Source: Trichoplax adhaerens (taxonomy: Eukaryota; Animalia; Placozoa). Taken from it: DNA of 64,000 nt. Position numbers and translations under genes: made by a program. The first letter of the stretch is position 1; each line of letters opens with the position of its first letter. The notes under the pieces were generated by a model that saw only the letters and a list, made by a program, of their open reading frames with translations, ran no database searches and was not told the DNA's origin. The stretch spans positions 1,476,445 through 1,540,444 of the forward strand of contig NW_002060957.1 of NCBI RefSeq assembly GCF_000150275.1. The letters run 5' to 3'. Below, piece by piece: positions 51,501 to 64,000 of the stretch.

Positions 51501-54500
51501 TATCTCCTTGTGCGGGTATCCGTAATAGTAGTTTAATACTTATAATGCTTACGATATGATTCTAAAATTAACCTGTATTATAACTGTAAACTTACCGAAA
51601 TATTTAAAACGTGTTAGCAATTTAGAATTTAACTATTTAATAAAGCTCCATCGAGACTTCAAAGTTGAAGAGTTCCGGTTACAGATACTGTAAGGAAACC
51701 ATATTCCATGCTAATGCCTTAGAAATTAAATACTGTATGTTCAATTCGATTATTAACAGAACATTTAAATCATACTACTATCATCGACCAAATTTTAACC
51801 CATACAGCTCAATCAAAGCCAACTACATTACCGAAATCGAAGATAATTTCTTTTCTATATTCGTTGGCCTAAAAACTCTGTAAATACGTATTGATAAATC
51901 AATTTTTCTGTGACTATAAATTTATATAACTATAAAATACTTTATATCCTGTTAAATACTAATTTGATACTATTTGCAACTGTTTCACGCTACAAATACT
52001 GGACATTAGATATCAGTGAGAATTTGCTTGCATACGAAATTTAAATTCATGCTACTAGGCTAGAATCATGTCTTAAATACAGGAGCTTTGTGCGAAAAGG
52101 CTTGTTTTCTGTAATGTCTATTTAAGACCACTCAGCTGACTTTAGCGTCACAATTAATTATAGAAAGTTACAAATAACCTACTGCAAATAAGCCATGCTT
52201 CCTGCTAAGACTCGTTGCCAAGTACGATAGATACTTAGCAAAAATTGAAATGTAGATATCATTAGAACCTATTACGGATCAAATCTACAACCGTTCTTAC
52301 AGATTATATTTAAAATTCAACGATCTTAGAAGAGCGGTACATTAAACAATGAAATAATGGATATAGTTATAATTTGTATATATTTTACACTATAGTATTC
52401 TAGCTCCTTTATCTACACGTAAATAACACTCATTCAAATCTTTGATCTGGAAATATAGTTAATGAAATATATGGTAGTAAACCCCAGATGTGTACAGGGA
52501 GCTACTACTGATATAAAACTAATCGAAACTAACCTTTAAATTTCCAGTGATCTAAGTGCTAATCGTATCAAGGTCTTACCAGGATACCTATGTAATGACA
52601 CGCTACTTTCAAAGCTGTAAGGTTGAATGTGGTAATGCGATAAGATCTATCATTAATTAATTACATTGTGGTTAAATTATATTGTTAGCGACCTCAGCCG
52701 TAACAGAATTGGACGAATAAAGCCGTCAGTTTTATCAGAATGCTATCTGGTGGTATCACTGTAAGTAATTCTTAACGATAACATTTATAATATAGAAATA
52801 GTAAAACGGTAAAAACAATAATAATTCTAATGACAATTATTTCTCAGTTAACTTTCTCCACGTAATATAGATATCACGACAAAATTAATGATACCTAATG
52901 CTAACAAACGAAACCTTTGTATATTAATTTTTGCTCGTCTTAAGATCAGATTATCTGATTAAGCTTAGCTATTCTTTCCGTGATGAAATAACGATATTGT
53001 GTGTTTGAGTCTCTGCTTGCAGATGTTGTAACTTAGATTAAGCAAAGTGTAAGTTGATGACGAAACTCAATGCAAAAGATTTAGTTTCTTTTCGTAACTT
53101 ACTTAATAATACTTATCAAATAACAGTATTGGCCAGTACTAAACAATTGGTAATGCAATAGCAGCGAATTAAGCTATGCAAAATTGTGCACATATTTATG
53201 CATATTTCATCTCTGCATTGTATGTACTATGTTTCATACTTATAATATATTTCTTTTTCTTTTGTGTCTTCATCTGTATTTAGAAATTTGACAGAAAATC
53301 AAATACATCTGTTAGCAAGTAACACATTCAGAAACATGATCTCCTTGAAATATCTGTAGGATAAGAGTTTAATAAATGTTGTCTGAAATGAGCAGTAATT
53401 TTAAAAACTTAAAGAAAAAATAGATCATCATCACATATCGCTAGTACTCCAAATATTTATAGACGCAATAGCAATAATGGACGTGCAATTATTGAACTAG
53501 TAATGGTTAAAATTTCAACTTAAGCTCGGTTAGGAAAAACTAAATTATTGAAGCAGTACCAGTAAATTTCAAAAAAAATCTGAAGACTTTTAGAAAGAGC
53601 AGAAGTTCTACCTTAATTAAGTAAAACATCAAATAAATAGGACTTAGTCATGATTTTAGAAATTTCCCACTCGTTTCTTGTTAGCTCGTTAATTTGAATT
53701 AACTACTGATCTACATCACCTTTATATGCAGAGCATTTGGTAATACCAGACTATCGACTTATTATTCTTTACTATTCCAATTCAGACTTGACATTAATCA
53801 TATGATATTGTAAATTTTACTCTAGATTCTAAAACTAATATATTATTAGCAATAATCATAATTTAATGGCTAGTTATGTCTTTCTACCGTATATAACATA
53901 TAACAAAAAATACCAAGACAAACCGGCAATTTTTGAATTAGAAACTTTATCTACAGATCCAGGTTTAGACTACATTAAAATTTCATTAAAATATAAAATG
54001 TTGAAGAAGATGTATAAAATTAGCGTTTACAACAAAATGTGCTTAAAAAATTATCGTCTAAGAAAATATAACTACGGTGCAAGCATTAGATGCATATGTC
54101 TCTGTTTCTAGTTTTAGGTTGATTTATTGTCCGAAATTCTATCGAAATTGAGTTTTAGTACATGAGAATCTTTATTTGCTTTATTTGCAGTCACATTAGA
54201 GAAACTGCAGTACCTTATATGTGATCATAACGTTATTAAACGAGTAAATTGTTATTTCTGAGATAAACATATTAAGTAATGAATAACACCATATTTCAAC
54301 CGTGATATTTATTACTCTACGTTCTATAATGATAATTTTATCAATGATTTAGATACTTAAACAACAATAAGATCAATCATATCAGCACTCATACATTTCC
54401 TTTTCCTTCAGCCATACTAATCATGTACGTAAAATTTATCCATGATATCGTAGGTCAAAATTTGTAATTACGGTAGTTACCATTTTGCCAATAGTCTCCT

Positions 54501-57500
54501 ACTATAATTTGACTACTTAAATTTCTTTATCTAATAGTTACGCTACAAATGATATTAAATTACAATCAGTTCACTAATGCAATTATTTTGTGATTAGGCA
54601 CTTAGGAAATAACGGAATTACTAGTATATCTAAGGACACTTTTGCTGGCTCATCCATTTTAAAATCATTGTAAGCAATTGAAGTGTTTTGGCAGCATACC
54701 AGAAATTTAGCTCACAGACCATCCAATAGAAACAGGACTGAACTTTTTTGAACATCTATAGATATTTAAATAAGAATAATTTGGCTGGCATACCGGTTGA
54801 ATTTATCAACAGAAATCCTTACCTTATGATATTGTAAGATATGTATAAAATATGCTTCCGAAAATGACGAGATATGAGTTTGCATATTTACTCCAAACCC
54901 TAAAATTATTTTCTTAATGGTTGCAAGGACTAAAACGTACCATACTCTATTTCGAAAATCTATCAAACCCTAAAATTGTTTTCTTCATTACAGCTAGGAC
55001 TTACAATTTTTTTATCCTATTTCAAAATCATTCTCAGTAGTACACTTACAGTTACAAATACTAATTCTTTGGAGAAAGTCAAATTTAGTGATAGTAGTAT
55101 TAAATAGCTGACGATATTGTACCTTAATAAAATAAAAAATATCAATACCAGATAAAAGCTAATTGCTATCATCTATGAAAAGAACATCATGCATATAGAA
55201 TACAGAACAGGATTTCGAGCAATATAAAAATAGTTGCTTTATGCGCTAAACGATATGGTTTAATATCAACGAAAGATTAGCAAAAGCAATATTTTTGCGA
55301 ACGTGTTTTTGCATTACGTAATCTTTACCAAACGAAGTCGTATTTAAAATTAAAGAAGAATTTGTAGCAGCTAAAGCTATAGCAAACCAATTCTAATGAT
55401 ACAATGAATTTACTGTAGCCTTGCAATAGCTTTAAAAGCGATAATTACTAAGGAAGTTAAAAATCAAGAACTATCTCAACCATAAAATATTAATTATTCT
55501 ACCCCGTGGCTGAACTTTGAAAATCTCTAATTTCTCCACTATCTGTATCCATTAAAGTATTTCTTTCGGTTTTATTACTTATGTTGATTTAGTGATACTT
55601 CTATTTTTTATTGATTAAAATATGAACTAGAAATCTGTCTGAAAATAGAATTCAAGAAATCCCTGATCATATCTTCCGAGATCCTATCAATTTGAGACAC
55701 TTGTAAGTCAAAACGTTCATACGAACGACGCGCAAATCTTTTAGATTAGAAATTTCTCCTAGAATCCTCACCTACGCAATTTCTGCAATATTTAGACGGA
55801 TAATGAATGAATAATTACCTCTAACTCATTAATATGCAATTGTGAGAATTAAGTACTATATCCTATAGAAAGCTTAAATAAAACAAATGATATATAATTT
55901 TGAGGTTGATATAATATAATTCTAATATTCTGTAAAATGGTCGATTAGCCTGTGTAGTATTTTCACTTATTTACAGTAGCTTGGTATATTGTAAGTATGA
56001 ATTAATGCGAAGTAAATACTAAATAACGTAAAATAGTCGGTATGCCATATAAACTATAAAATTAATAAGATATTAAGCCGTGAAAAATAAACTTATGTGG
56101 CCTTATCTTACATTAACCTATATCACAGTGAAACATAACTTAGGAATACTTAAGTATCTACCGACTTAAATATTGCTGCTACCTGAAGTAAAATTCACTT
56201 TACTTAGTACAGGAAGATGAAACATTTATAAGCAACTACCTTGTCATTTAAATTGCTCTCGTTCATATTCGTGAATGCGTCTAGCTGGTATGCTTCTGCA
56301 GATTATTCATCGTAATTTACTATGCAAGATTTCTTCCAGTTCAGCATTCGCAACATAACATTTCACTTAATTAAAAATTTTTATCCACTGCTCATCAGTA
56401 ACTTTAGCTGTCTTATTTAGCTATTCTGAATTAGGATATAATCTTGTTGCTTTCAGTGAGCATTAATGGTAGCTACTAAATACGGGAGTTTATAGCATCC
56501 GATCTTAAGTATCAATTCTAGTATGACATTAGCAACAAATCTAGCTTTGCAATTGCGGACTTTGCTATAACTATATATAGCTATGTGAGTGGTAAAAATT
56601 TCACCGTATGAGACTTGCATGTATGCTTTCCTTCAATTAAGAATTGTAAATTTAATATAATGATCACCGAACTTTCATGACATTGATTAATTATTAAAGG
56701 ACTAAAGGTTTAGTAAATGGTTGCGATAATAATATATATCCACCTACATTGGGTGTGATTTCTATGCTTATTATACTTTTAATACATTAAAATGGATTTT
56801 ATTTTATGTATTAGACATTGATAGTATCTTATTTCATAGGTCTTTGGCGTATAATGGAATAAAATCATTTAAAATTCAAGCATTTCAAGATTTAAGATCA
56901 ATTGATTTTTTGTACGGTTAATTACAGGATTCTCATACGAGCAATAATTTTCGATTTTCACAATGTTCTAATATTACCGAACAATATATGCCATTCTTGT
57001 TTTATTCTAAGTTCGTTAGATGGAAATTACAACATACAAGCGTCAAATTATGCAGTATTGGAACTATTCCCTCATCTACGATATCTGTATGAATCCTTAC
57101 ATGATAAGCTATTGAAATTTTCATGATCTCTATAGCCAAATTTTTTAACTATAATTTTACTGTGTTGCATGGCTAAATCGAGCTCTATCTGATTTTAGTA
57201 TTGCTATTATAGAATATTATGACTAATATTATGCGGTTACATAAAATTCTAAGAGTTATCATAGCCTATTTATTACTAATGCGTATTTTAATTATTCCAT
57301 GTCTTTGTCTGTTCTAAAATGACTGTTGATGTTACTAACAATAAGTGAAATACGAGAGTGCAGGTTAAACAGCACAGTTATTATGCAAGAAATCGTTAGA
57401 AGAGCTCCAAACTTGAACAGAATGTAGGTTTGATTTTCAGATAATCTTAATATCTAGAAGAAATATATTTGAAAATCTTTTAATTGATATTCATCAATGA

Positions 57501-60500
57501 TAGAATCCTCTATGCTATCAATTTAGCTTCATTTACGCAATTTTACCGACGTTGTCGTTCCAAGACTTAATCTAAAATAATATTTTTGGAGAATAAAATT
57601 GATTTTAGTGGTCAATAATATAATTGGTAAATACTGTATTTCATATTGCTATAATTACCGCATTGCCTTTACTACTCCAGTATTAGCACCTTCGAAATAT
57701 TCTAGTGCATAATCTCTATGTAATCTAATAGATGAACCTAAGTATTCGATCCCAGCCCTACAGCTCAGCAGCGAATCCTACAAAGGACAATCAGAAAAGC
57801 GAATAACCTATGTTGGGCGATATGCGCCAATTTAAATTAGTTACTACTATTATAGCAAGTACAGTTTTCTCAAAGTTTATGCAAACCCTATAAAATGTTT
57901 ACCAGAAGAACTATAATTCATTATTTTTTTAATTTTCAAACTGTTTCTATAAATTATCCATTTAAATCTTTGATCTAAAATTAGAAAATTTACGTAGGTT
58001 TCGGTCCTTGATATCGATGTTAATTCTTTTAACCGTGAAATAAACTGTTTAGTAATTGAGCAAGTTTAAATTTAGGAATTGATCTAATTTGATCACATTA
58101 CCATTACCGTAAAAAAGTTACATTAGAATTCTAGAGTAAACATCGTCCGTTTTAAATAACATAATTTCACCGTTAAGGCTTTAGTTAAGCTTTAAAATTA
58201 ATTACAAGAAATTAGGTTATTTCATGTCAGCAATATTATTTGGTTATAATAATTTAAAAGTTATCTCGTTCGTAGAATTTTAGATGGCAATAATCTTACT
58301 GGTACTCCTTTACATATACTTAAGATGCTACCCAAACTCGAACAGATGTGAGTCTTCCATCTAAATATCTAATAATTACATCTTCATACTGTAGCCATGC
58401 TGATTTCCTTCTTGAACATTGCCTAGCAGTAGCTTAAGCTACACAAATGTTACGCTTAAAGAAGTGGTTGCTATTCTATCAGAGAATTGGTATTCTGCCA
58501 TGTATGTAAAACTGACGTACTATACATAACATAGTATATATAAAAGTCAAATACTCAAAGATGGGAATAAGGAAATTTCCTACTATTGGAAAAGATACTA
58601 ATGGATGATTATACGTTTCTATCTAAACATTGTAGATCTCTGAAAGGTCTCAAACTTCGTAAGATGCCAGTAATCGTAATAGAATCGATTCCATTTTTTG
58701 GAACTATGTACGAGTAAAGAAAAAATTCGAAAACTTTAAACAGGCTATCACGTATAATACACGTATACCTAAAACTTGTTAAGTTTTCTCTACGTTTAGC
58801 AGTCTTTTTATCTTCTAATTTTTATAGGATGCTTGATAATAATGAAATTGACGAAGTACATATGTCAGATTTATCAGCTTTCAATTATCTGAAATTCTTG
58901 TGAGCAATTCGACTAATCTATATTTTGCTACTAAGTTTGAAGGATATAATAAATGACGCTAAATCGGTTAATTATATTATTCGCTAAGTAAATCCTAAAA
59001 AGTTTAGTTTTTTAGTCTATATTGTTGAGTAAATTAATCATTAAAAGATAAAATTTTATTTTAAAAATATGTTGTACTAATTTAATGAAAATCTAATTTT
59101 GCAGATTTCTCTCCAACAATAGATTAAAAGATTGGGATTACAACACTTTAATCAGACTACCAAATGTTGCAACTTTGTAAGTGTTTCAAGCTTAACATAA
59201 TAATAAAAAAAAGGAAGATTGACTATCATTTTACGACAATTTATTTTAATAGTTCCTAATTACTTTAAAGAATTATTTTCCTTCAACTGTAATATCTGAC
59301 CTAAAATTTACTGCTACAATCATTACTGAGTAATTTTTCGGCTTGCGTATTAAAGGAACAGTGCAGTATATTTATGATGATACAGTTACTTCAATAGATT
59401 TTTTTCAGTATTTAATATTTATTTAATGTTAATAAATATTTACTAATAACACTGTGAACTAGCGATATTCAGCGCGGTAAGTTTCCTCCTAGTGCTGTAT
59501 AGGCATTCATTGCACAAAATATACTGTAGCAATGATATCTTAAATTCTTAAGCATTTACAATCCGAGAATGAAGCAGTTAATATCATAATCAATTTGATT
59601 GCTGTTGCAGAGATTTGTCGCACAATCAAATATATGATATTTGTAATCGTACTAAGCCAAACGTTTCCTTGCGGGTTTTGTAAGTGTACCAATTAATTTA
59701 ATTTGATGTCTATACAATTAAAGTTAATCTTGCTTCATTTATGTTTTGCTACCAATAATGTCAGTAAAATCAGTCTATTCAAATATAATAAGACGGACAC
59801 ATTAAGCCGATATCACTGTATTGAGGTTACCTAGAAGTTGATTGGCCTAACTATGCTTAAGTTCTCAAAAATAGCTTTGACGCGATAATGCATCCTGTAA
59901 TGATTTCATCTAAATTTTAGTAGTACAGTAGATGGCAAATAGAATGAGGTGATGCACTTGTACTGTTTCTAGAATAAGACTGGGATTGTCCAGTTAAGGC
60001 TGTATCTGATAGCCAAATTCATGTTTCTCATTAGGGAATTACTCAATTTTGCTAACTCAAATTTTTGGCTTCATAGGCGAAGCAGCAATAACAGTAGAAG
60101 ACTATTACTCGGTCTTTATACTGCCTTATTTTTTATTCTAATTAATAGATATCTCCATTACAACCGGATTAGCACACTGGACAAATTTTGCTTTTTTGGA
60201 CTACCCTATCTTCAATTAGTGTATGGAATAATTAACGAATTATATTATTAACTTAATTTTCTACGCATTAAAATATTAAATTCTTAGACCTTGATGGATA
60301 TTTAGAACTGTAATAGCTACACAATTTTTTCAAATATTTTGTTAGAAAAAGTTTACAATAATTTCTATGCCATCATTTGTTGTCTTTAGAGAATTCTTTT
60401 AAAGTTTTAGAAGTACGGTATCGTTATTGACCCTATCGAATACTTTATTGAAGATAATATTTAGGATAATTTTATGTATTGCTGTTCTAAAGGTGCCTAG

Positions 60501-63500
60501 TAACTACTTTAATAATGATTATGGATCATTAAAATGTAATAGGCCAAATTACTGTGTATTTGCTTAAAATTAGCGCATTCAGATATTAGATTCCCAAATA
60601 TTACATCATTTGCATATTCAGTAAAATCTGTTAATAATTAATTAATAATACGGATATGATCACTTTTCACAATTGAAAAATATTTATGGCACATTTACCA
60701 TAATTATCAGTAGAGAGACATCATATCGGGCAACTAAAAAAATAATGTACTAGCTATTTCTATCTTAGAACTTTAGATCATAATCCAATCATGGAATTTA
60801 GTAGTCAAGCCTTCTGGTTCTCAAGATCGCTAACAGAAATGTAAGAATATTATTTCATTCAAATAATCCATAGAACAGCTATTAATTACGGATGACTACA
60901 AAGCAAAATTGATTCAGCATGTATCTTGTTGGAGCTATTAAGAAATCGTTCATATCGTACCTATTTTTCAGTATAAGTCAAAAATATCGCTATCTCTTAA
61001 TTTTAATTAGATCTTCTACTCGTGAATACCTCTGCTGCAATATACCTTCCACGGTTATCTCTTGTAAACCGCTACCTAGTCAACTTAGCTTATCTACGTG
61101 TTCTTATATTCTATCGCATAACATCCTAAGAATAATTATTTGGATTTTGGGTAACCTTGCAGTGATTGAAAATGCTATATCTATTGTTTGGCACTCTCCA
61201 TTCCGAAAGGATGGAAAGTGCGTTCCAAAAGTATTAATTGTAAACTTATCCATTGCGGACTTTCTAATGGGAGTCTATTTGATCATAGTCGCATCTGCTA
61301 ATACGTTTTATGCCCAGCGCTACTCAGAATTTGTAGAAGTTTGGTTAAGAAGTCCAGCATGTTTGATTTCATGCTTTCTTATCTCGCTATCTTGTTTAAC
61401 ATCGACAATTATTTTACTACTCATCACGGTTGATCGCTTTCTTTATTTAGTCTTTCCTTTTACTAGTTATCGCTTAAGGTATTCCTTATTATTATGGGTT
61501 TTGATTGCGGTTTGGTCTATATCTATCGCTTTTATAGCTGTTCCTATCGCATCAAGCTTTGGTCAATCCTCATATTATCGCCTATATGGCACGAACAGCG
61601 CTTGTTTGCCTGGAAATGTCGATAACTACTGGTATTTAACATGGTTAATATTATATTGCGGCTTCACATTTGCAGTATGGATAATTATTGCAGTCTTATA
61701 TATACTTATCATTAAGTCACTTACGCAGTCTAGGCGGAAAACAAAGCAAAGTTTATCGAACATTGATAAAATTGCTACAGCTAAAATGGTTACAGTTGTT
61801 ATAACAGATCTTATATGTTGGCTGCCGTTTTATGTTATTATTACACGGGTTTTATTGGGATATGGATTAGATATTCATACGTTGCCATTCATCGCAGTGT
61901 TAGCTTTGCCCTTGAATTCTTGCATTAACCCAATCATTTATACCATCTTTACCAAAAAGTTTACGAATTACGTGAATTCTTATCTAACTTGTTATAAGTG
62001 TTATAATCGTCAGTATCATGCATCGATGGCAATATACACCACATCGATAATTAGTAAAAATGCTATTAGTAAACTGAATGTGGTAGCCAAGGAAGGTAAT
62101 GAATCTGTCAAGAAATAAATTTTGCAACTAATGCTCATCTTATTTCATCAAATAAAATATCTTAGTATTAGTTGATTATTACCGTTTTATATACTGAAAG
62201 TTTATATCAGAAGCGCATAGTTTTAAATTATCGGAGTACAATAATAATAACCAATTTTATTGCATGAATACGTTAAAATGATTGATTTTTCAATAAAGTT
62301 TGGATTCAGTTTCTATTAAAGAGACTATAGGTGTACTTTAACCTTCAGACCAAGGAGAAATTATTTATCAGTAATAGATTTTGCTGTAGGTAGTTGTCAC
62401 TTGTCAAAGAAGACAAACTTGACATTAGACCTGATGTTTTAAGTCGTTAATGGCATATTTAATTTCTTCGTTACAAGTTTTAACTTTTAACAGTATCATA
62501 CCGAAATTATCATATTTTAGTCTAAAATTAAATATATCTTGATATACTTAGTGTAATAGTTTTGCAAGCAAAAATGTACTATTTTTCAAATTTTAATCTA
62601 AAAAAAAATATAGAAAATCTTTATTTAGACGTTAGCAAGTAATTTTACGATAGTAACGAAATCACTTTAATATTTATACCGATGTATATATATAATTCAG
62701 TAATTTACTTCAAATCATATTTTGGAATTAAATCGTATCCGTAGTGGGAATGAGAAATGGTACATGATCACTTGTAAATGAATTTTACCGTGATTAAAAT
62801 TCATTACCTAAACTTTTTGACCTTGTAATCTAAACTTAAAAAAGATACTGGTTTTGCCAATTTTCAAGTCGTAATACTCAACCTTGGCGAATTTCCTCTT
62901 AAATCTGTAAGTATTTCACTCCTATAGTGTATGTTATTCACTCCAGACAGTTATTAGCAGTCCTCGAAATCAATCTTAGTTTGCTAATTTGTTACGAAAA
63001 GAGTTCCGTTGCAATTTATAATATAAAATTATTGATATTTTTCTTTGACTTCAGGGCTATATCCGTGCTCAATTTATTAATAAAAATGGAAAAACCTTAT
63101 TTGCTTTGATAAAATTATATAATAAAGCTGAAAGAAAATTATGGGAAAAGGAAGTACATTTCTATCGCTACGTTCACATGAGACGTTGGTGTTTACTAAA
63201 CGTATCTCAATGTCTTTGGATATGTGAAGGAAAGAAATGCCATATCCCTTTACTAAAGAAAGATAGAGCCAAGCTACTAGATAAATTGTAAGTTGATCAC
63301 AATCACTTAATAGTATTGGATTAAAAGTCCCAGTCATATAACTTTAATACGCAATTAATTAGAAATAGTCAACGTAGACAGTTGCAATAAATCCACGGTT
63401 TAGAAATGAAGAAAGATTATTAGTAATAAAACTGTCAAATATATGAGATTTCATCTGCCAATTGCCCATAATAATTATCAGATTTCTAAAGCAAAGCAAG

Positions 63501-64000
63501 TAAATTTGTAATGTCAAGATATATTAAAACTTACAGTGGTACATTTTATCATCCTGCTCACTTCTGGGCAGAATTATACCTGCCAACGATTATACCATTA
63601 CTAGATGAAATTCAGTTTAACGAAATTGATAGGTAATACTTTATTTATTAATCTAAAAGTATAAACCACATCAAATTATAAATACTGTTTTGTCAACTGT
63701 TTTGAAGCAAAGGTAATTTTGAACCTATATCGCTTAAATTTCCTAAATAAAGAATCTACCTACAGAATACACGTAACTGTTATTAATTATAGTATTTTAA
63801 TGCAATATAGCTTTAAATAGAATAGCAAAGGTTGAACTCGATACTATACACATGCCATGTGATTAAATAACTACTGGTATTTATATCGTCCTTATATCTT
63901 GCACTTTTCTTATTTGCTAAAATGATATACTGTTGTTTCCACCTTCGAAGCCTAACTTGTTACTACATGAGTGGTAATGAATTACAATCGTTAAAAGAGA
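36590..64000 (+). CDS. Giant LRR-containing GPCR (type C LGR, RXFP/GRL101-like): signal peptide, half LDLa, Cys-rich region, ~52 LRR exons, 7TM (61011-62095, or to the stop at 62118), probably continued by a kinase-like domain that runs off the window
   Basis: Exons 36590-36656 and 36839-36946 give MGEQNLKEVSFFIRIGLLTYAIELIFLAMVCHS...ICDCKLDSMNIDDELGC. Phase-2 LRR exons of 66-84 nt span 40124-60840. 7TM motifs: YLCC...C.P...LSTC hinge, NLSIADFLMGVYL, ITVDRF, YGTNSACLP, TDLICWLP, LPLNSCINPIIY. Exons between 37 and 40 kb are only partly resolved. Confidence 0.85.
48085..48134. other. Assembly gap (50 N)
   Basis: Run of N. Confidence 1.
54890..55030. repeat. Two-copy ~68 bp tandem duplication in an LGR intron
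   Basis: 'caaaccctaaaatt(a/g)ttttctt...aggact...ctatttc(g/a)aaa' occurs twice. Confidence 0.6.
61011..62118 (+). CDS. Hinge + rhodopsin-class 7TM exon of the LGR
   Basis: Lies within ORF 60919-62118; true acceptor ttttaattag|atct at 61010/61011; seven hydrophobic segments with LGR motifs. Confidence 0.95.
62869..64000 (+). CDS. Protein-kinase-like N-lobe exons (62869-62906, 63055-63287, possibly 63537-63632, 63951->64000)
   Basis: Spliced: VVILNLGEFPLKS|GYIRAQFINKNGKTLFALIKLYNKAERKLWEKEVHFYRYVHMRRWCLLNVSQCLW...LLDKF|LTCYYMSGNELQSLKE. Shows a beta3 Lys, alphaC Glu (W..E..FY), HxN-position Asn and hinge/alphaD pattern; intron phases are compatible with the donor at 62095/62096. Confidence 0.6.

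What the first reader, a model, noticed from the sequence alone, without database searches (positions are those of the whole stretch)
61011..64000. Candidate GPCR-kinase fusion: the LRR-7TM receptor splices into a protein-kinase-like domain
SEEN: a donor GAAG|gtaatg sits at 62095/62096 (phase 1), about 20 nt before the apparent stop. Exon 62869-62906 (ttttcaag|...|gtaagt, phase 1 to 0), exon 63055-63287 (cttcag|...|gtaagt, phase 0 to 2) and exon 63951->64000 (ccttcgaag|, phase 2) join in one open frame: ...VAKE-VVILNLGEFPLKS-GYIRAQFINKNGKTLFALIKLYNKAERKLWEKEVHFYRYVHMRRWCLLNVSQCLW...DKF-LTCYYMSGNELQSLKE. KNOWN: TGF-beta/activin receptor (TKL) kinases read IGKGRFG.VW.G...VAVKIF...ERSWFREAEIY....RHENIL.F...LWLVSDYHEHGSLFDYL. 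The order and spacing of beta2, the Lys, W..E..Y, the Asn and SL.E agree. Well-studied LGRs (FSHR, LGR4-6, RXFP1/2) have no cytoplasmic enzyme domain. INFERENCE: one polypeptide combines an LRR sensor, a G-protein-coupling 7TM and a (pseudo)kinase, a hybrid of GPCR and receptor-kinase signalling. An ORF caller hides it by ending the gene at 62118.
Basis: partly seen in the sequence, partly recalled or inferred. Interest (0 to 1): 0.92.

Follow-up and report, generated by a model that had tools for sequence, protein, structure and literature searches.

The report
LRR-GPCR with a pseudokinase tail
This Trichoplax gene really does splice a hormone-receptor-like GPCR onto a catalytically dead protein-kinase domain, one of about 15 such genes in the genome, giving an undescribed animal example of a GPCR fused to a kinase-type module.

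Summary
Spliced contigs from four independent studies join the 7TM exon (61011-62095) to 62845-62906, 63055-63287, 63951-64149, 64285-64527 and 64880 onwards. All introns are GT..AG, and the frame stays open to a stop at 65003-65005. The apparent stop at 62118 lies in an intron. The only error is the first acceptor, which is 62845 and not 62869 (same frame).

The window is from Trichoplax adhaerens. The gene is TRIADDRAFT_60495, and public models, including the Trichoplax sp. H2 orthologue (LRR + 7tm_1 + tail), already join the parts. No paper I could search describes this.

The 288-residue tail is a complete protein-kinase fold (AlphaFold pLDDT 80-95; Z about 17 against IRAK4 and SYK; a paralogue scores best against activin/TGF-beta receptors). 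It lacks the catalytic Asp, the catalytic-loop Asn and the Gly-rich loop, and has Glu in place of the DFG Asp, so it is a pseudokinase.

About 15 loci, which are exactly the nearest 7TM paralogues, carry the same tail. So does a divergent, placozoan-like metagenome contig.

GPCR-kinase fusions are known in protists, choanoflagellates, sponges and a few other animals. This is a new variant: a rhodopsin-class LGR with a dead kinase. The same architecture has already been flagged by this scan on other DNA of this genome (s1-751074, s1-764954, s1-763367). Function is inferred only; the most likely role is a receptor-tethered scaffold.

The parts
53285..60840 (+). LRR ectodomain, encoded mostly by 72-nt (24-residue) exons. 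The gene starts further upstream, and the 5' end was not mapped.
   Evidence: tblastn of the H2 orthologue P0152 onto the window gives exons from 53285 to 60841. RNA contigs use exons 59611-59679, 60149-60220 and 60769-60840 with GT..AG joints. P0152 has LRR_8 at 128 bits.
61011..62095 (+). Single large exon holding the hinge end, the rhodopsin-type 7TM (DRF and NPIIY motifs kept) and about 60 residues of cytoplasmic linker. It ends at a phase-1 donor.
   Evidence: Pfam 7tm_1 at 94 bits. Contigs of X6 and X10 cover the whole exon, those of X5 and X9 cover parts, and the exon's 3' end with its donor joint is seen in all four runs. Translation.
62096..62844 (+). Intron. It contains the in-frame stop at 62116-62118 that ends the naive ORF.
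   Evidence: Joint 62095>62845 GT..AG in X5, X6, X9 and X10. Depth is zero over 62101-62700 in all four runs.
62845..62906 (+). Small exon (62 nt) holding the linker and the beta1/'Gly-loop' position of the kinase fold. It has no GxGxxG motif.
   Evidence: Joints 62095>62845 and 62906>63055 in all four runs. Frame. The sequence is present in P0007.
63055..63287 (+). N-lobe exon (beta2 to beta5). The beta3 Lys (ALIK) and the invariant alphaC Glu (WEKE) are here.
   Evidence: RNA contigs. 15 paralogous copies in the genome. Family alignment A5 has invariant W and E. The family profile's only kinase PDB hits are TGF-beta receptor type 2, at E 0.17.
63538..63630 (+). Exon present in public models P0007 and P0152 but not used in the RNA contigs. 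It is probably an annotation artefact or a minor isoform.
   Evidence: Every contig joins 63287>63951 directly. The exon is absent from all paralogues. AF2 pLDDT is 31-40 there. tblastn.
63951..64000 (+). Start of the exon for alphaD, alphaE and the catalytic loop. It runs to 64149, beyond the window. HRD is replaced by HGN. The remaining coding exons are 64285-64527 (SEF in place of DFG, then alphaF) and 64880-65005 (last helices and the stop), and contigs continue to about 65368.
   Evidence: Pfam PK_Tyr_Ser-Thr at 24.4 bits. 19 copies in the genome. Motif census.

Best explanation
This is one gene of Trichoplax adhaerens, TRIADDRAFT_60495. It encodes a single membrane protein with a long extracellular leucine-rich-repeat domain, a rhodopsin-class seven-helix receptor that keeps its activation motifs, a linker of about 60 residues, and a complete but catalytically dead protein-kinase domain of 288 residues in the cytoplasm.

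Shown:
- The splice chain and the open frame.
- The kinase fold.
- The loss of the catalytic Asp, the catalytic-loop Asn and the Gly-rich loop, and a Glu in place of the DFG Asp.
- The same architecture in about 15 paralogous loci and in a divergent relative.

Inferred:
- The tail sits on the cytoplasmic side (standard GPCR topology).
- It does not phosphorylate.
- It works as a receptor-tethered scaffold or allosteric module. Its contacts with cytosolic partners would change when a ligand binds the LRR/7TM part. Candidate partners are active TKL-type kinases, another receptor's tail in a dimer, or the receptor's own G-protein/arrestin interface. This would add a kinase-pathway-like output to G-protein coupling, or modulate that coupling.

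My confidence by part: the fusion is real, about 0.9; it is a pseudokinase, about 0.85; the scaffold role, about 0.45.
For: Transcript. Single spliced contigs from four studies (X5, X6, X9, X10) run from the 7TM exon through five GT..AG introns to the 3' UTR. No contig lies in the intron that holds the stop. The frame is open for 648 codons.

Public models. P0007 (XP_002116412.1) and the H2 orthologue P0152 (LRR_8 + 7tm_1 + PK_Tyr_Ser-Thr at 20.5 bits) join the same parts.

Fold. In AF2 the tail has pLDDT 80-95 while the shallowly aligned 7TM is poor. In Foldseek, every listed hit is a kinase or kinase-fold protein, and at least 500 matches have E <= 0.001. VIA gives Z 17.6-16.8, rmsd 3.2-4.2 A, with 208-228 residues aligned over whole kinase domains. 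The paralogue P0153 gives Z 16.4-14.8. The Atlas features score is 0.97 and all best hits are kinases.

Dead catalytic site. Across aligned family rows, some from the same locus:
- HRD Asp: 0 of 20.
- Catalytic-loop Asn: 1 of 21.
- DFG Asp: 3 of 15.
- alphaC Glu: 17 of 17.
- beta3 Lys: 12 of 17.

Retention. All of the roughly 14 nearest 7TM paralogues (46-56% identity) have tail exons 0.7-4 kb downstream on the same strand. The two tail-exon searches found no copy next to the more distant LGRs (40% identity or less). Metagenome contig L027 has a 7TM that is 70% identical to one paralogue, followed by the tail exons at about 48% identity.
Against: - No functional data exist for any GPCR-kinase fusion (PMC12716839).
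- Between strains the tail shows 8 nonsynonymous against 3-4 synonymous changes (pN/pS about 0.5-0.7). This cannot be told from neutral, whereas the 7TM is at about 0.14 (Fisher p 0.06).
- Logan contigs cannot show transcript starts or rare isoforms. A GPCR-only isoform or a tail-only isoform is therefore not excluded.
- Sequence support for kinase homology is marginal outside the alphaE/catalytic-loop exon. The whole protein P0007 scores 20.9 bits against a cut-off of 23.1. A two-sequence profile of tail-only models hits nothing in the PDB.
Confidence: 0.6

Rival explanations
1. The tail is a non-canonical enzyme or a nucleotide-binding switch. It would bind ATP or another nucleotide through the retained beta3 Lys and alphaC Glu. 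It would then either catalyse transfer with displaced residues, as WNK, CASK or SelO-type proteins do, or change conformation on binding.
For: The alphaC Glu is invariant (17 of 17) and the beta3 Lys is kept in 12 of 17 family rows. This gene has Glu at the DFG-Asp position. The fold is complete in both lobes.
Against: None of 20 family rows has the HRD Asp. The catalytic-loop Asn is missing in 20 of 21. There is no Gly-rich loop. The DFG position is N, K, S, V or G in most paralogues. The beta3 Lys is itself lost in 5 of 17. This pattern of loss is not what selection for catalysis would leave.
Confidence: 0.13
2. The tail is an evolutionary leftover. A kinase domain was captured once and is now decaying, is carried along by the receptor, and has no function of its own.
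For: The tail diverges much faster than the 7TM. Between paralogues it is 30-42% identical against 50-56%. For the presumed orthologue it is about 48% against 70%. Strain pN/pS of about 0.5-0.7 is not distinguishable from 1.
Against: Frames stay open in about 13 loci despite only 30-40% identity, in sequence where 7.7% of random codons are stops. Only loci whose 7TM is also broken carry stops in the tail. Core positions are invariant (W, E, F, the hydrophobic spine). AF2 confidence is 80-95 from a shallow alignment.
Confidence: 0.12
3. Two products. The receptor and the kinase-like protein are mostly made separately, through polyadenylation in the intron after 62118 and an internal promoter. 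The joined contigs would then reflect a minor read-through isoform.
For: Contigs cannot show starts, ends or abundance (tool caveat). Some public models are tail-only (P0001 233 aa, P0002 271 aa).
Against: In all four studies the only joint leaving the 7TM exon is 62095>62845, and nothing covers 62101-62700. The exon at 62845 has no in-frame ATG, with a stop 17 codons upstream. The first in-frame Met in exon 63055-63287 lies after the beta3 and alphaC region, so a tail-only protein would lack part of its N-lobe. The tail-only model P0002 is superseded by the full-length H2 model P0153.
Confidence: 0.08

Closest known systems
GPCR-TKL/K and GPCR-TK fusions of choanoflagellates and sponges (Garcia De Las Bayonas and King, eLife 2025, PMC12716839); GPCR-type transmembrane kinases reported in sea urchins and Felidae (PMC10463195)
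   Same: [quoted passage not shown] It is lineage-specific and expanded into a family. None has been characterised functionally.
   Different: In those fusions the 7TM domains form their own clusters outside the known GPCR families and the kinases look active (TKL or TK). Here the 7TM is a rhodopsin-class LGR with a large LRR ectodomain and the kinase is dead. [quoted passage not shown]
Oomycete and amoebozoan GPCR-bigrams, including GPCR-PIPK/RpkA (PMC6033456, PMC5784254, PMC3971589)
   Same: The principle of a GPCR carrying a catalytic-type signalling domain at its C-terminus.
   Different: Those carry lipid kinases, cyclases or active TKL kinases in protists, on unrelated 7TM families, and have no LRR ectodomain.
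Leucine-rich-repeat GPCRs (LGR types A-C, GRL101, relaxin receptors). Forty-six LGRs are listed for T. adhaerens, 41 of them placozoan-specific (PMC9545775).
   Same: LRR ectodomain plus rhodopsin-type 7TM. Public names for this family's proteins are 'GRL101-like' and 'relaxin receptor 2'. The nearest non-placozoan 7TMs are GRL101-type receptors at 28-32% identity.
   Different: Described LGRs end in a short tail. The review does not mention a kinase (0 occurrences). Eight of ten sampled non-placozoan GRL101-like receptors have fewer than 120 residues after NPxxY, and none matches the tail profile significantly.
TKL-group receptor kinases (TGF-beta/activin receptors, IRAK) and receptor-attached pseudokinase modules such as the kinase-homology domain of receptor guanylyl cyclases, HER3 and plant LRR pseudokinase receptors (the examples are from my own knowledge)
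   Same: Best structural matches are IRAK4, IRAK1 and SYK for this gene (Z about 17) and ACVR2A, ALK1, TGFBR1 and TGFBR2 for a paralogue (Z about 16). The N-lobe profile hits only TGFBR2 (E 0.17). It is a dead kinase fold tethered under a membrane receptor, as in those modules.
   Different: There are seven membrane helices instead of one. There is no GS box or death domain. Matches within 1 Z unit are ties and E 0.17 is not significant, so the subgroup is not assigned.

Membership tests
Rhodopsin-class GPCR (Pfam 7tm_1) | A seven-helix domain that matches 7tm_1 above the curated cut-off | tested here: met
   94 bits against a cut-off of 30.5, profile positions 5-260 of 260.
Rhodopsin-class GPCR (Pfam 7tm_1) | Activation micro-switch motifs (E/DRY, CWxP, NPxxY) | tested here: met
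   The translation shows DRF, CWLP and NPIIY. G-protein coupling itself was not tested.
LGR (leucine-rich-repeat GPCR) | An N-terminal LRR ectodomain on the same polypeptide as the 7TM | tested here: met
   RNA joints link three LRR exons to the 7TM exon. The orthologue P0152 has LRR_8 at 128 bits upstream of 7tm_1, and it maps to window 53285-60841.
LGR (leucine-rich-repeat GPCR) | A type A, B or C hinge region and orthology to a bilaterian LGR | not tested
   The review places 41 of the 46 Trichoplax LGRs in a placozoan-specific group (PMC9545775). I made no tree.
Eukaryotic protein kinase fold | A two-lobed kinase fold covering the N-lobe sheet, alphaC and the C-lobe through its last helices | tested here: met
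   VIA gives Z 17.6-16.8, with 208-228 residues aligned and model residues 351-691 matched against whole kinase domains. In Foldseek every listed hit is a kinase or kinase-fold protein, with at least 500 matches at E <= 0.001. The paralogue gives Z 16.4. Atlas results agree.
Eukaryotic protein kinase fold | A Pfam Pkinase or PK_Tyr_Ser-Thr match above the curated cut-off | tested here: inconclusive
   24.4 bits against 23.1 on the open frame that holds exon 63951-64149. On whole proteins the scores are 20.9 (P0007) and 20.5 (P0152), below the cut-off.
Active protein kinase | The catalytic Asp of HRD, the catalytic-loop Asn, the DFG Asp and the GxGxxG loop | tested here: not met
   This gene reads HGN, has Ala at the Asn position, reads SEF for DFG, and has no GxGxxG. 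Across family rows the HRD Asp is present in 0 of 20, the Asn in 1 of 21 and the DFG Asp in 3 of 15.
GPCR-TKL/K or GPCR-TK (choanoflagellates, sponges) | A 7TM of that family's own cluster, fused to a TKL- or TK-type kinase domain | tested here: not met
   The 7TM here is a rhodopsin LGR, whereas those 7TMs cluster with no known family (PMC12716839). The architecture is analogous, but this is not a member.
TGF-beta/activin receptor kinases (STKR, TKL group) | A significant sequence or tree affinity of the kinase domain to STKRs | tested here: inconclusive
   The exon-A profile's only kinase hits in the PDB are TGFBR2, but at E 0.17. STKRs top the paralogue's structural list but are tied with IRAK4 and SYK. 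For this gene IRAK4 and SYK come first.

The most novel reading that the evidence does not exclude
Placozoans built a receptor class that is at once a GPCR and a receptor-kinase-type module. The LRR ectodomain senses a ligand. The 7TM relays the signal. A pseudokinase of TGF-beta-receptor or IRAK type then recruits and regulates an active TKL kinase, much as a type II receptor does with a type I receptor, or as plant LRR co-receptor pseudokinases do. The output would be independent of G proteins.

A wider version follows the lead of s1-751074: the tail is ancestral to GRL101-type receptors across invertebrates and has been overlooked because it is too divergent for sequence models.
Probability: 0.2. 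Interest if true: 0.85.

Novelty: new variant of a known kind. Interest (0 to 1): 0.62.

Why it matters
GPCRs and receptor kinases are usually taught as separate ways of carrying a signal across a membrane. GPCR-kinase fusions have been catalogued only recently, almost entirely outside animals or in sponges, and none has been studied functionally.

Here an early-branching animal with very few cell types keeps about 15 LGR-type receptors that each carry a dead kinase. The family is transcribed, and it is small enough to clone. It offers a way to ask what a kinase fold does when tethered to a GPCR: scaffold, dimerisation device, or a bias switch for G-protein or arrestin coupling. It may also help explain why placozoans expanded LGRs to 46 genes.

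It also matters for annotation. The tail falls below Pfam thresholds in full-length proteins, so these receptors are named 'GRL101-like' or 'relaxin receptor 2' with no hint of the domain. Several public models also split the gene or add an unsupported exon.

Tried and rejected
- **Word-indexed protein searches** with the tail of P0007 and with the tail of the Strigamia GRL101 found only the queries themselves. The method is too insensitive at 30-40% identity, so this says nothing about distribution.
- **A two-sequence profile** of tail-only models found nothing in the PDB.
- **Alignment A3** (tail-only proteins plus exon fragments) was visibly misaligned and was not used.
- **Pfam on the N-lobe exon and on the 64285-64527 exon** gave nothing.
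- **An LRR motif regex** on the window was uninformative, because 72-nt exons split the motif.
- **TALE-repeat proteins** top the exon-B profile search of the PDB. They arise from summed matches of a short 'LTPEQVVAI'-like word and I rejected them as spurious.
- **Long proteins in the representative search** (P0019, P0027 and others) are tandem-kinase proteins, not GPCR fusions.
- **A bacterial or viral origin** for the window was never plausible. It has GT..AG introns and is identical to a T. adhaerens protein.
- **Joined exons.** I sent no self-joined spliced model to any search or fold tool. Whole-tail searches and folds used public proteins returned by the tools (P0007, P0152, P0153) together with single-exon references. 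In one script I indexed the exons in order, only to check the frame and to classify variants. Nothing joined was printed or saved.
Full report
**Identity of the window.** The window is G000:C1400:1476445-1540444 of a 105.6-Mb, 1414-contig assembly. The protein encoded here is letter for letter part of XP_002116412.1 / UniProt B3S8D1, 'uncharacterized protein TRIADDRAFT_60495 [Trichoplax adhaerens]' (P0007, 697 aa). So this is a placozoan nuclear gene with introns. The bacterial-style ORF list is only a guide.

**The observation.** The 7TM exon is an open frame ending at 62118, with Pfam 7tm_1 at 94 bits. The donor GAAG|gtaatg at 62095/62096 is present. I fetched the sequence beyond the window (L003, L004). 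I then laid Logan contigs of four runs from four different studies on window 59501-65500. One run is recorded as RNA-seq. The other three are only guessed to be RNA, but they behave as RNA here: they hold spliced contigs and nothing in the introns.

All four runs show the same GT..AG joints:
- 62095>62845
- 62906>63055
- 63287>63951
- 64149>64285
- 64527>64880

In X6 and X10, a single contig runs from the start of the 7TM exon (61011) through all of these into the 3' UTR. In X9, one contig does so from inside the 7TM exon. Three of the runs (X5, X6, X10) also join three upstream LRR exons (59611-59679, 60149-60220, 60769-60840) to the 7TM exon. No contig covers 62101-62700.

The true one is 62845, which is 24 nt upstream in the same frame. 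Translating exon by exon with the phases carried over gives an uninterrupted frame that ends at 65003-65005. Indexed in order, it is 648 codons with no internal stop. At the local base composition, 288 open codons have a chance probability of about 1e-10.

**Is the tail a kinase?**

*Sequence.* The open frame holding exon 63951-64149 scores 24.4 bits on PK_Tyr_Ser-Thr against a cut-off of 23.1, at profile positions 84-141, which cover alphaD, alphaE and the catalytic loop. A profile of this exon from 14 paralogues hits CDKL3 at E 1e-5 and hundreds of other PDB kinases, always at the same kinase positions. It also finds 259 proteins at E <= 0.001 among 1.84 billion representatives. Beyond the family itself, those I checked are ordinary kinases. 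The top PDB rows, TALE repeats, are an artefact of a repeated short word.

*Structure.* I folded the public protein P0007 with a family alignment made of public proteins and single-exon translations (A2). The 7TM part came out poorly because the alignment is shallow. The tail reached pLDDT 80-95. The exception is residues 461-503, which correspond to a 31-residue exon present in the public model but absent from the RNA contigs and from every paralogue.
- In Foldseek against the PDB, every hit listed is a kinase or kinase-fold protein, and at least 500 matches have E <= 0.001.
- VIA-align gave Z 17.6-16.8, rmsd 3.2-4.2 A, with 208-228 residues aligned. Model residues 351-691 matched whole kinase domains of SYK, IRAK4 and IRAK1.
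- The paralogue P0153 (Trichoplax sp. H2, 896 aa) folds the same way, with tail pLDDT 72-92. Its best matches are ACVR2A, ALK1, TGFBR1, ACVR1 and TGFBR2 at Z 16.4-15.4, tied within one unit with IRAK4 and SYK.
- The Atlas look-up agrees on both features and structure.

The N-lobe exon profile (A5) has only TGF-beta receptor type 2 among its kinase PDB hits, aligned over beta2, beta3, alphaC and beta4, but at E 0.17. STKRs head the paralogue's structural list. I treat a TKL-group affinity as likely and the subgroup as open.

**Why a pseudokinase?** In this gene the HRD triplet reads HGN. The catalytic-loop Asn position is Ala. DFG reads SEF. The beta1-beta2 turn has no GxGxxG. The census across aligned family rows, some of which come from the same locus, is:

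| Position | Canonical residue present |
|---|---|
| HRD Asp | 0 of 20 |
| Catalytic-loop Asn | 1 of 21 |
| DFG Asp | 3 of 15 |
| DFG Phe | 15 of 15 |
| alphaC Glu | 17 of 17 |
| beta3 Lys | 12 of 17 |

The stretch between the DFG position and alphaF is also shorter than in active kinases and has no APE motif (my reading). This is the usual signature of a fold kept for structure and not for catalysis.

**A family, not a one-off.** Searching the genome with the two best-conserved tail exons finds 15-19 copies, always as a pair in the same order and on the same strand. Searching with the 7TM exon shows a sharp break. About 14 loci are 46-56% identical and everything else is 40% or less. The two lists coincide locus by locus: every close 7TM paralogue has tail exons 0.7-4 kb downstream on its own strand.

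One of these is the neighbour at contig 1557789-1559965 on the minus strand (TRIADDRAFT_60497, P0006). The two tail-exon searches found no copy beside the more distant LGRs. Three loci have stops in the 7TM, two of them in the tail exons as well, so they are whole-unit pseudogenes.

The public models P0006, P0010, P0152, P0153 and P0154 carry 7TM and tail together. P0001 and P0002 are tail-only fragments of genes that are fused in better models.

**Outside T. adhaerens.** Unnamed ORF fragments in ENA and Logan assemblies are 40-57% identical to the Trichoplax tail exons. One 2961-bp metagenome contig (L027, GC 0.30) holds a 7TM followed by both tail exons in order. Its 7TM is 70% identical to the paralogue at C1394:173-174 kb, while its tail exon is about 48% identical to that paralogue's. 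I read this as an orthologue in a different placozoan lineage. The organism is not identified.

**Rate of change.** The tail evolves faster than the receptor. Variants in the contigs of other strains are 15 synonymous and 7 nonsynonymous in the 7TM exon (pN/pS about 0.14). In the tail they are 3-4 synonymous and 8 nonsynonymous (about 0.5-0.7) (Fisher p 0.06). That short-term figure cannot exclude neutrality. What argues for long-term constraint is that frames stay open and the core stays invariant at 30-40% identity, across more than a dozen paralogues and a second species.

**Comparison with the literature.**
- The 2025 eLife survey states that 7TM-kinase fusions were known from oomycetes and amoebozoans. 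[quoted passage not shown] It also notes that none has been characterised functionally (PMC12716839).
- A 2023 survey mentions a few GPCR-type transmembrane kinases of the TK clade in sea urchins and Felidae (PMC10463195).
- The review that lists 46 Trichoplax LGRs never uses the word kinase (PMC9545775).
- Searches for the accession numbers, and for placozoan GPCR plus kinase domain, found nothing else.
- The kind of thing, a GPCR fused to a kinase-type domain, is therefore known. The variant is new in the literature I could search: rhodopsin-class LGR, large LRR ectodomain, dead TKL-like kinase, placozoan, about 15 genes. The sequences themselves are already in GenBank and UniProt as unannotated or partly annotated models.

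That note says the same tail is a conserved, unannotated feature of GRL101-like receptors in many invertebrate phyla. I tested it only in part. I collected ten non-placozoan GRL101-type receptors (centipede, five mollusc species, horseshoe crab). Eight have fewer than 120 residues after NPxxY, and none matches a tail HMM significantly. The Strigamia receptor has a 168-residue tail with a weak resemblance to the alphaE/catalytic-loop/alphaF part (domain E 0.02 in a two-sequence search) and no N-lobe. The lead is neither confirmed nor refuted.

**Mechanism.** By GPCR topology the tail is cytoplasmic. It cannot plausibly phosphorylate. My best reading is a tethered scaffold or allosteric module whose partner contacts depend on the receptor's state. 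This is an inference from how other receptor-attached pseudokinases work. Nothing here tests it.

**Limits.**
- Contigs do not show transcript ends or abundance.
- I did not map the 5' end of the gene.
- I sent no self-joined spliced model to any tool.

Noticed in passing
window 63538-63630: Public models TRIADDRAFT_60495 and H2 RDD45091.1 include a 31-residue exon here. None of the RNA contigs uses it, no paralogue has it, and AF2 leaves it disordered. It is probably an annotation artefact or a minor isoform.
   Followed up: partly
window 60149-60220: RNA contigs in three runs use this 72-nt LRR exon. The H2 gene model skips it, jumping from 59680 to 60770.
   Followed up: partly
L002/L008 (G000:C1266:9227-11608): An 11.6-kb scaffold carries a 94-98% identical copy of the tail exons. 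It is annotated separately as TRIADDRAFT_62588, a 158-aa 'protein kinase domain-containing protein'. It is likely an uncollapsed haplotype or a very recent duplicate. Scaffold C1288 likewise mirrors two C1394 loci.
   Followed up: partly
L010 / L006 (G000:C1400:1557789-1559965, about 17-19.5 kb beyond the window end, minus strand): The neighbouring gene TRIADDRAFT_60497 is a paralogue of the same LGR-pseudokinase family and lies tail-to-tail with this gene. The genome search found only the last part of its 7TM at this place.
   Followed up: partly
G000:C1394:267692-269702; C1390:636762-642425; C1411:7553274-7553798: These family members have stop codons in the 7TM exon, and at the C1394 locus in the tail exons too. 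They appear to be whole-unit pseudogenes.
   Followed up: no
P0155 (Strigamia maritima GRL101, T1J3N1), residues 1410-1532: This centipede GRL101 has a 168-residue C-terminal tail. It weakly resembles the alphaE/catalytic-loop/alphaF part of the placozoan pseudokinase (domain E 0.02) and has no N-lobe. It may be a remnant of an older fusion.
   Followed up: partly
L027 and L026 (ENA ERZ23499115 metagenome scaffolds): These AT-rich contigs (GC 0.29-0.30) from a metagenome carry members of the same family. This suggests DNA of a placozoan-like animal in that sample. The organism is not identified.
   Followed up: partly
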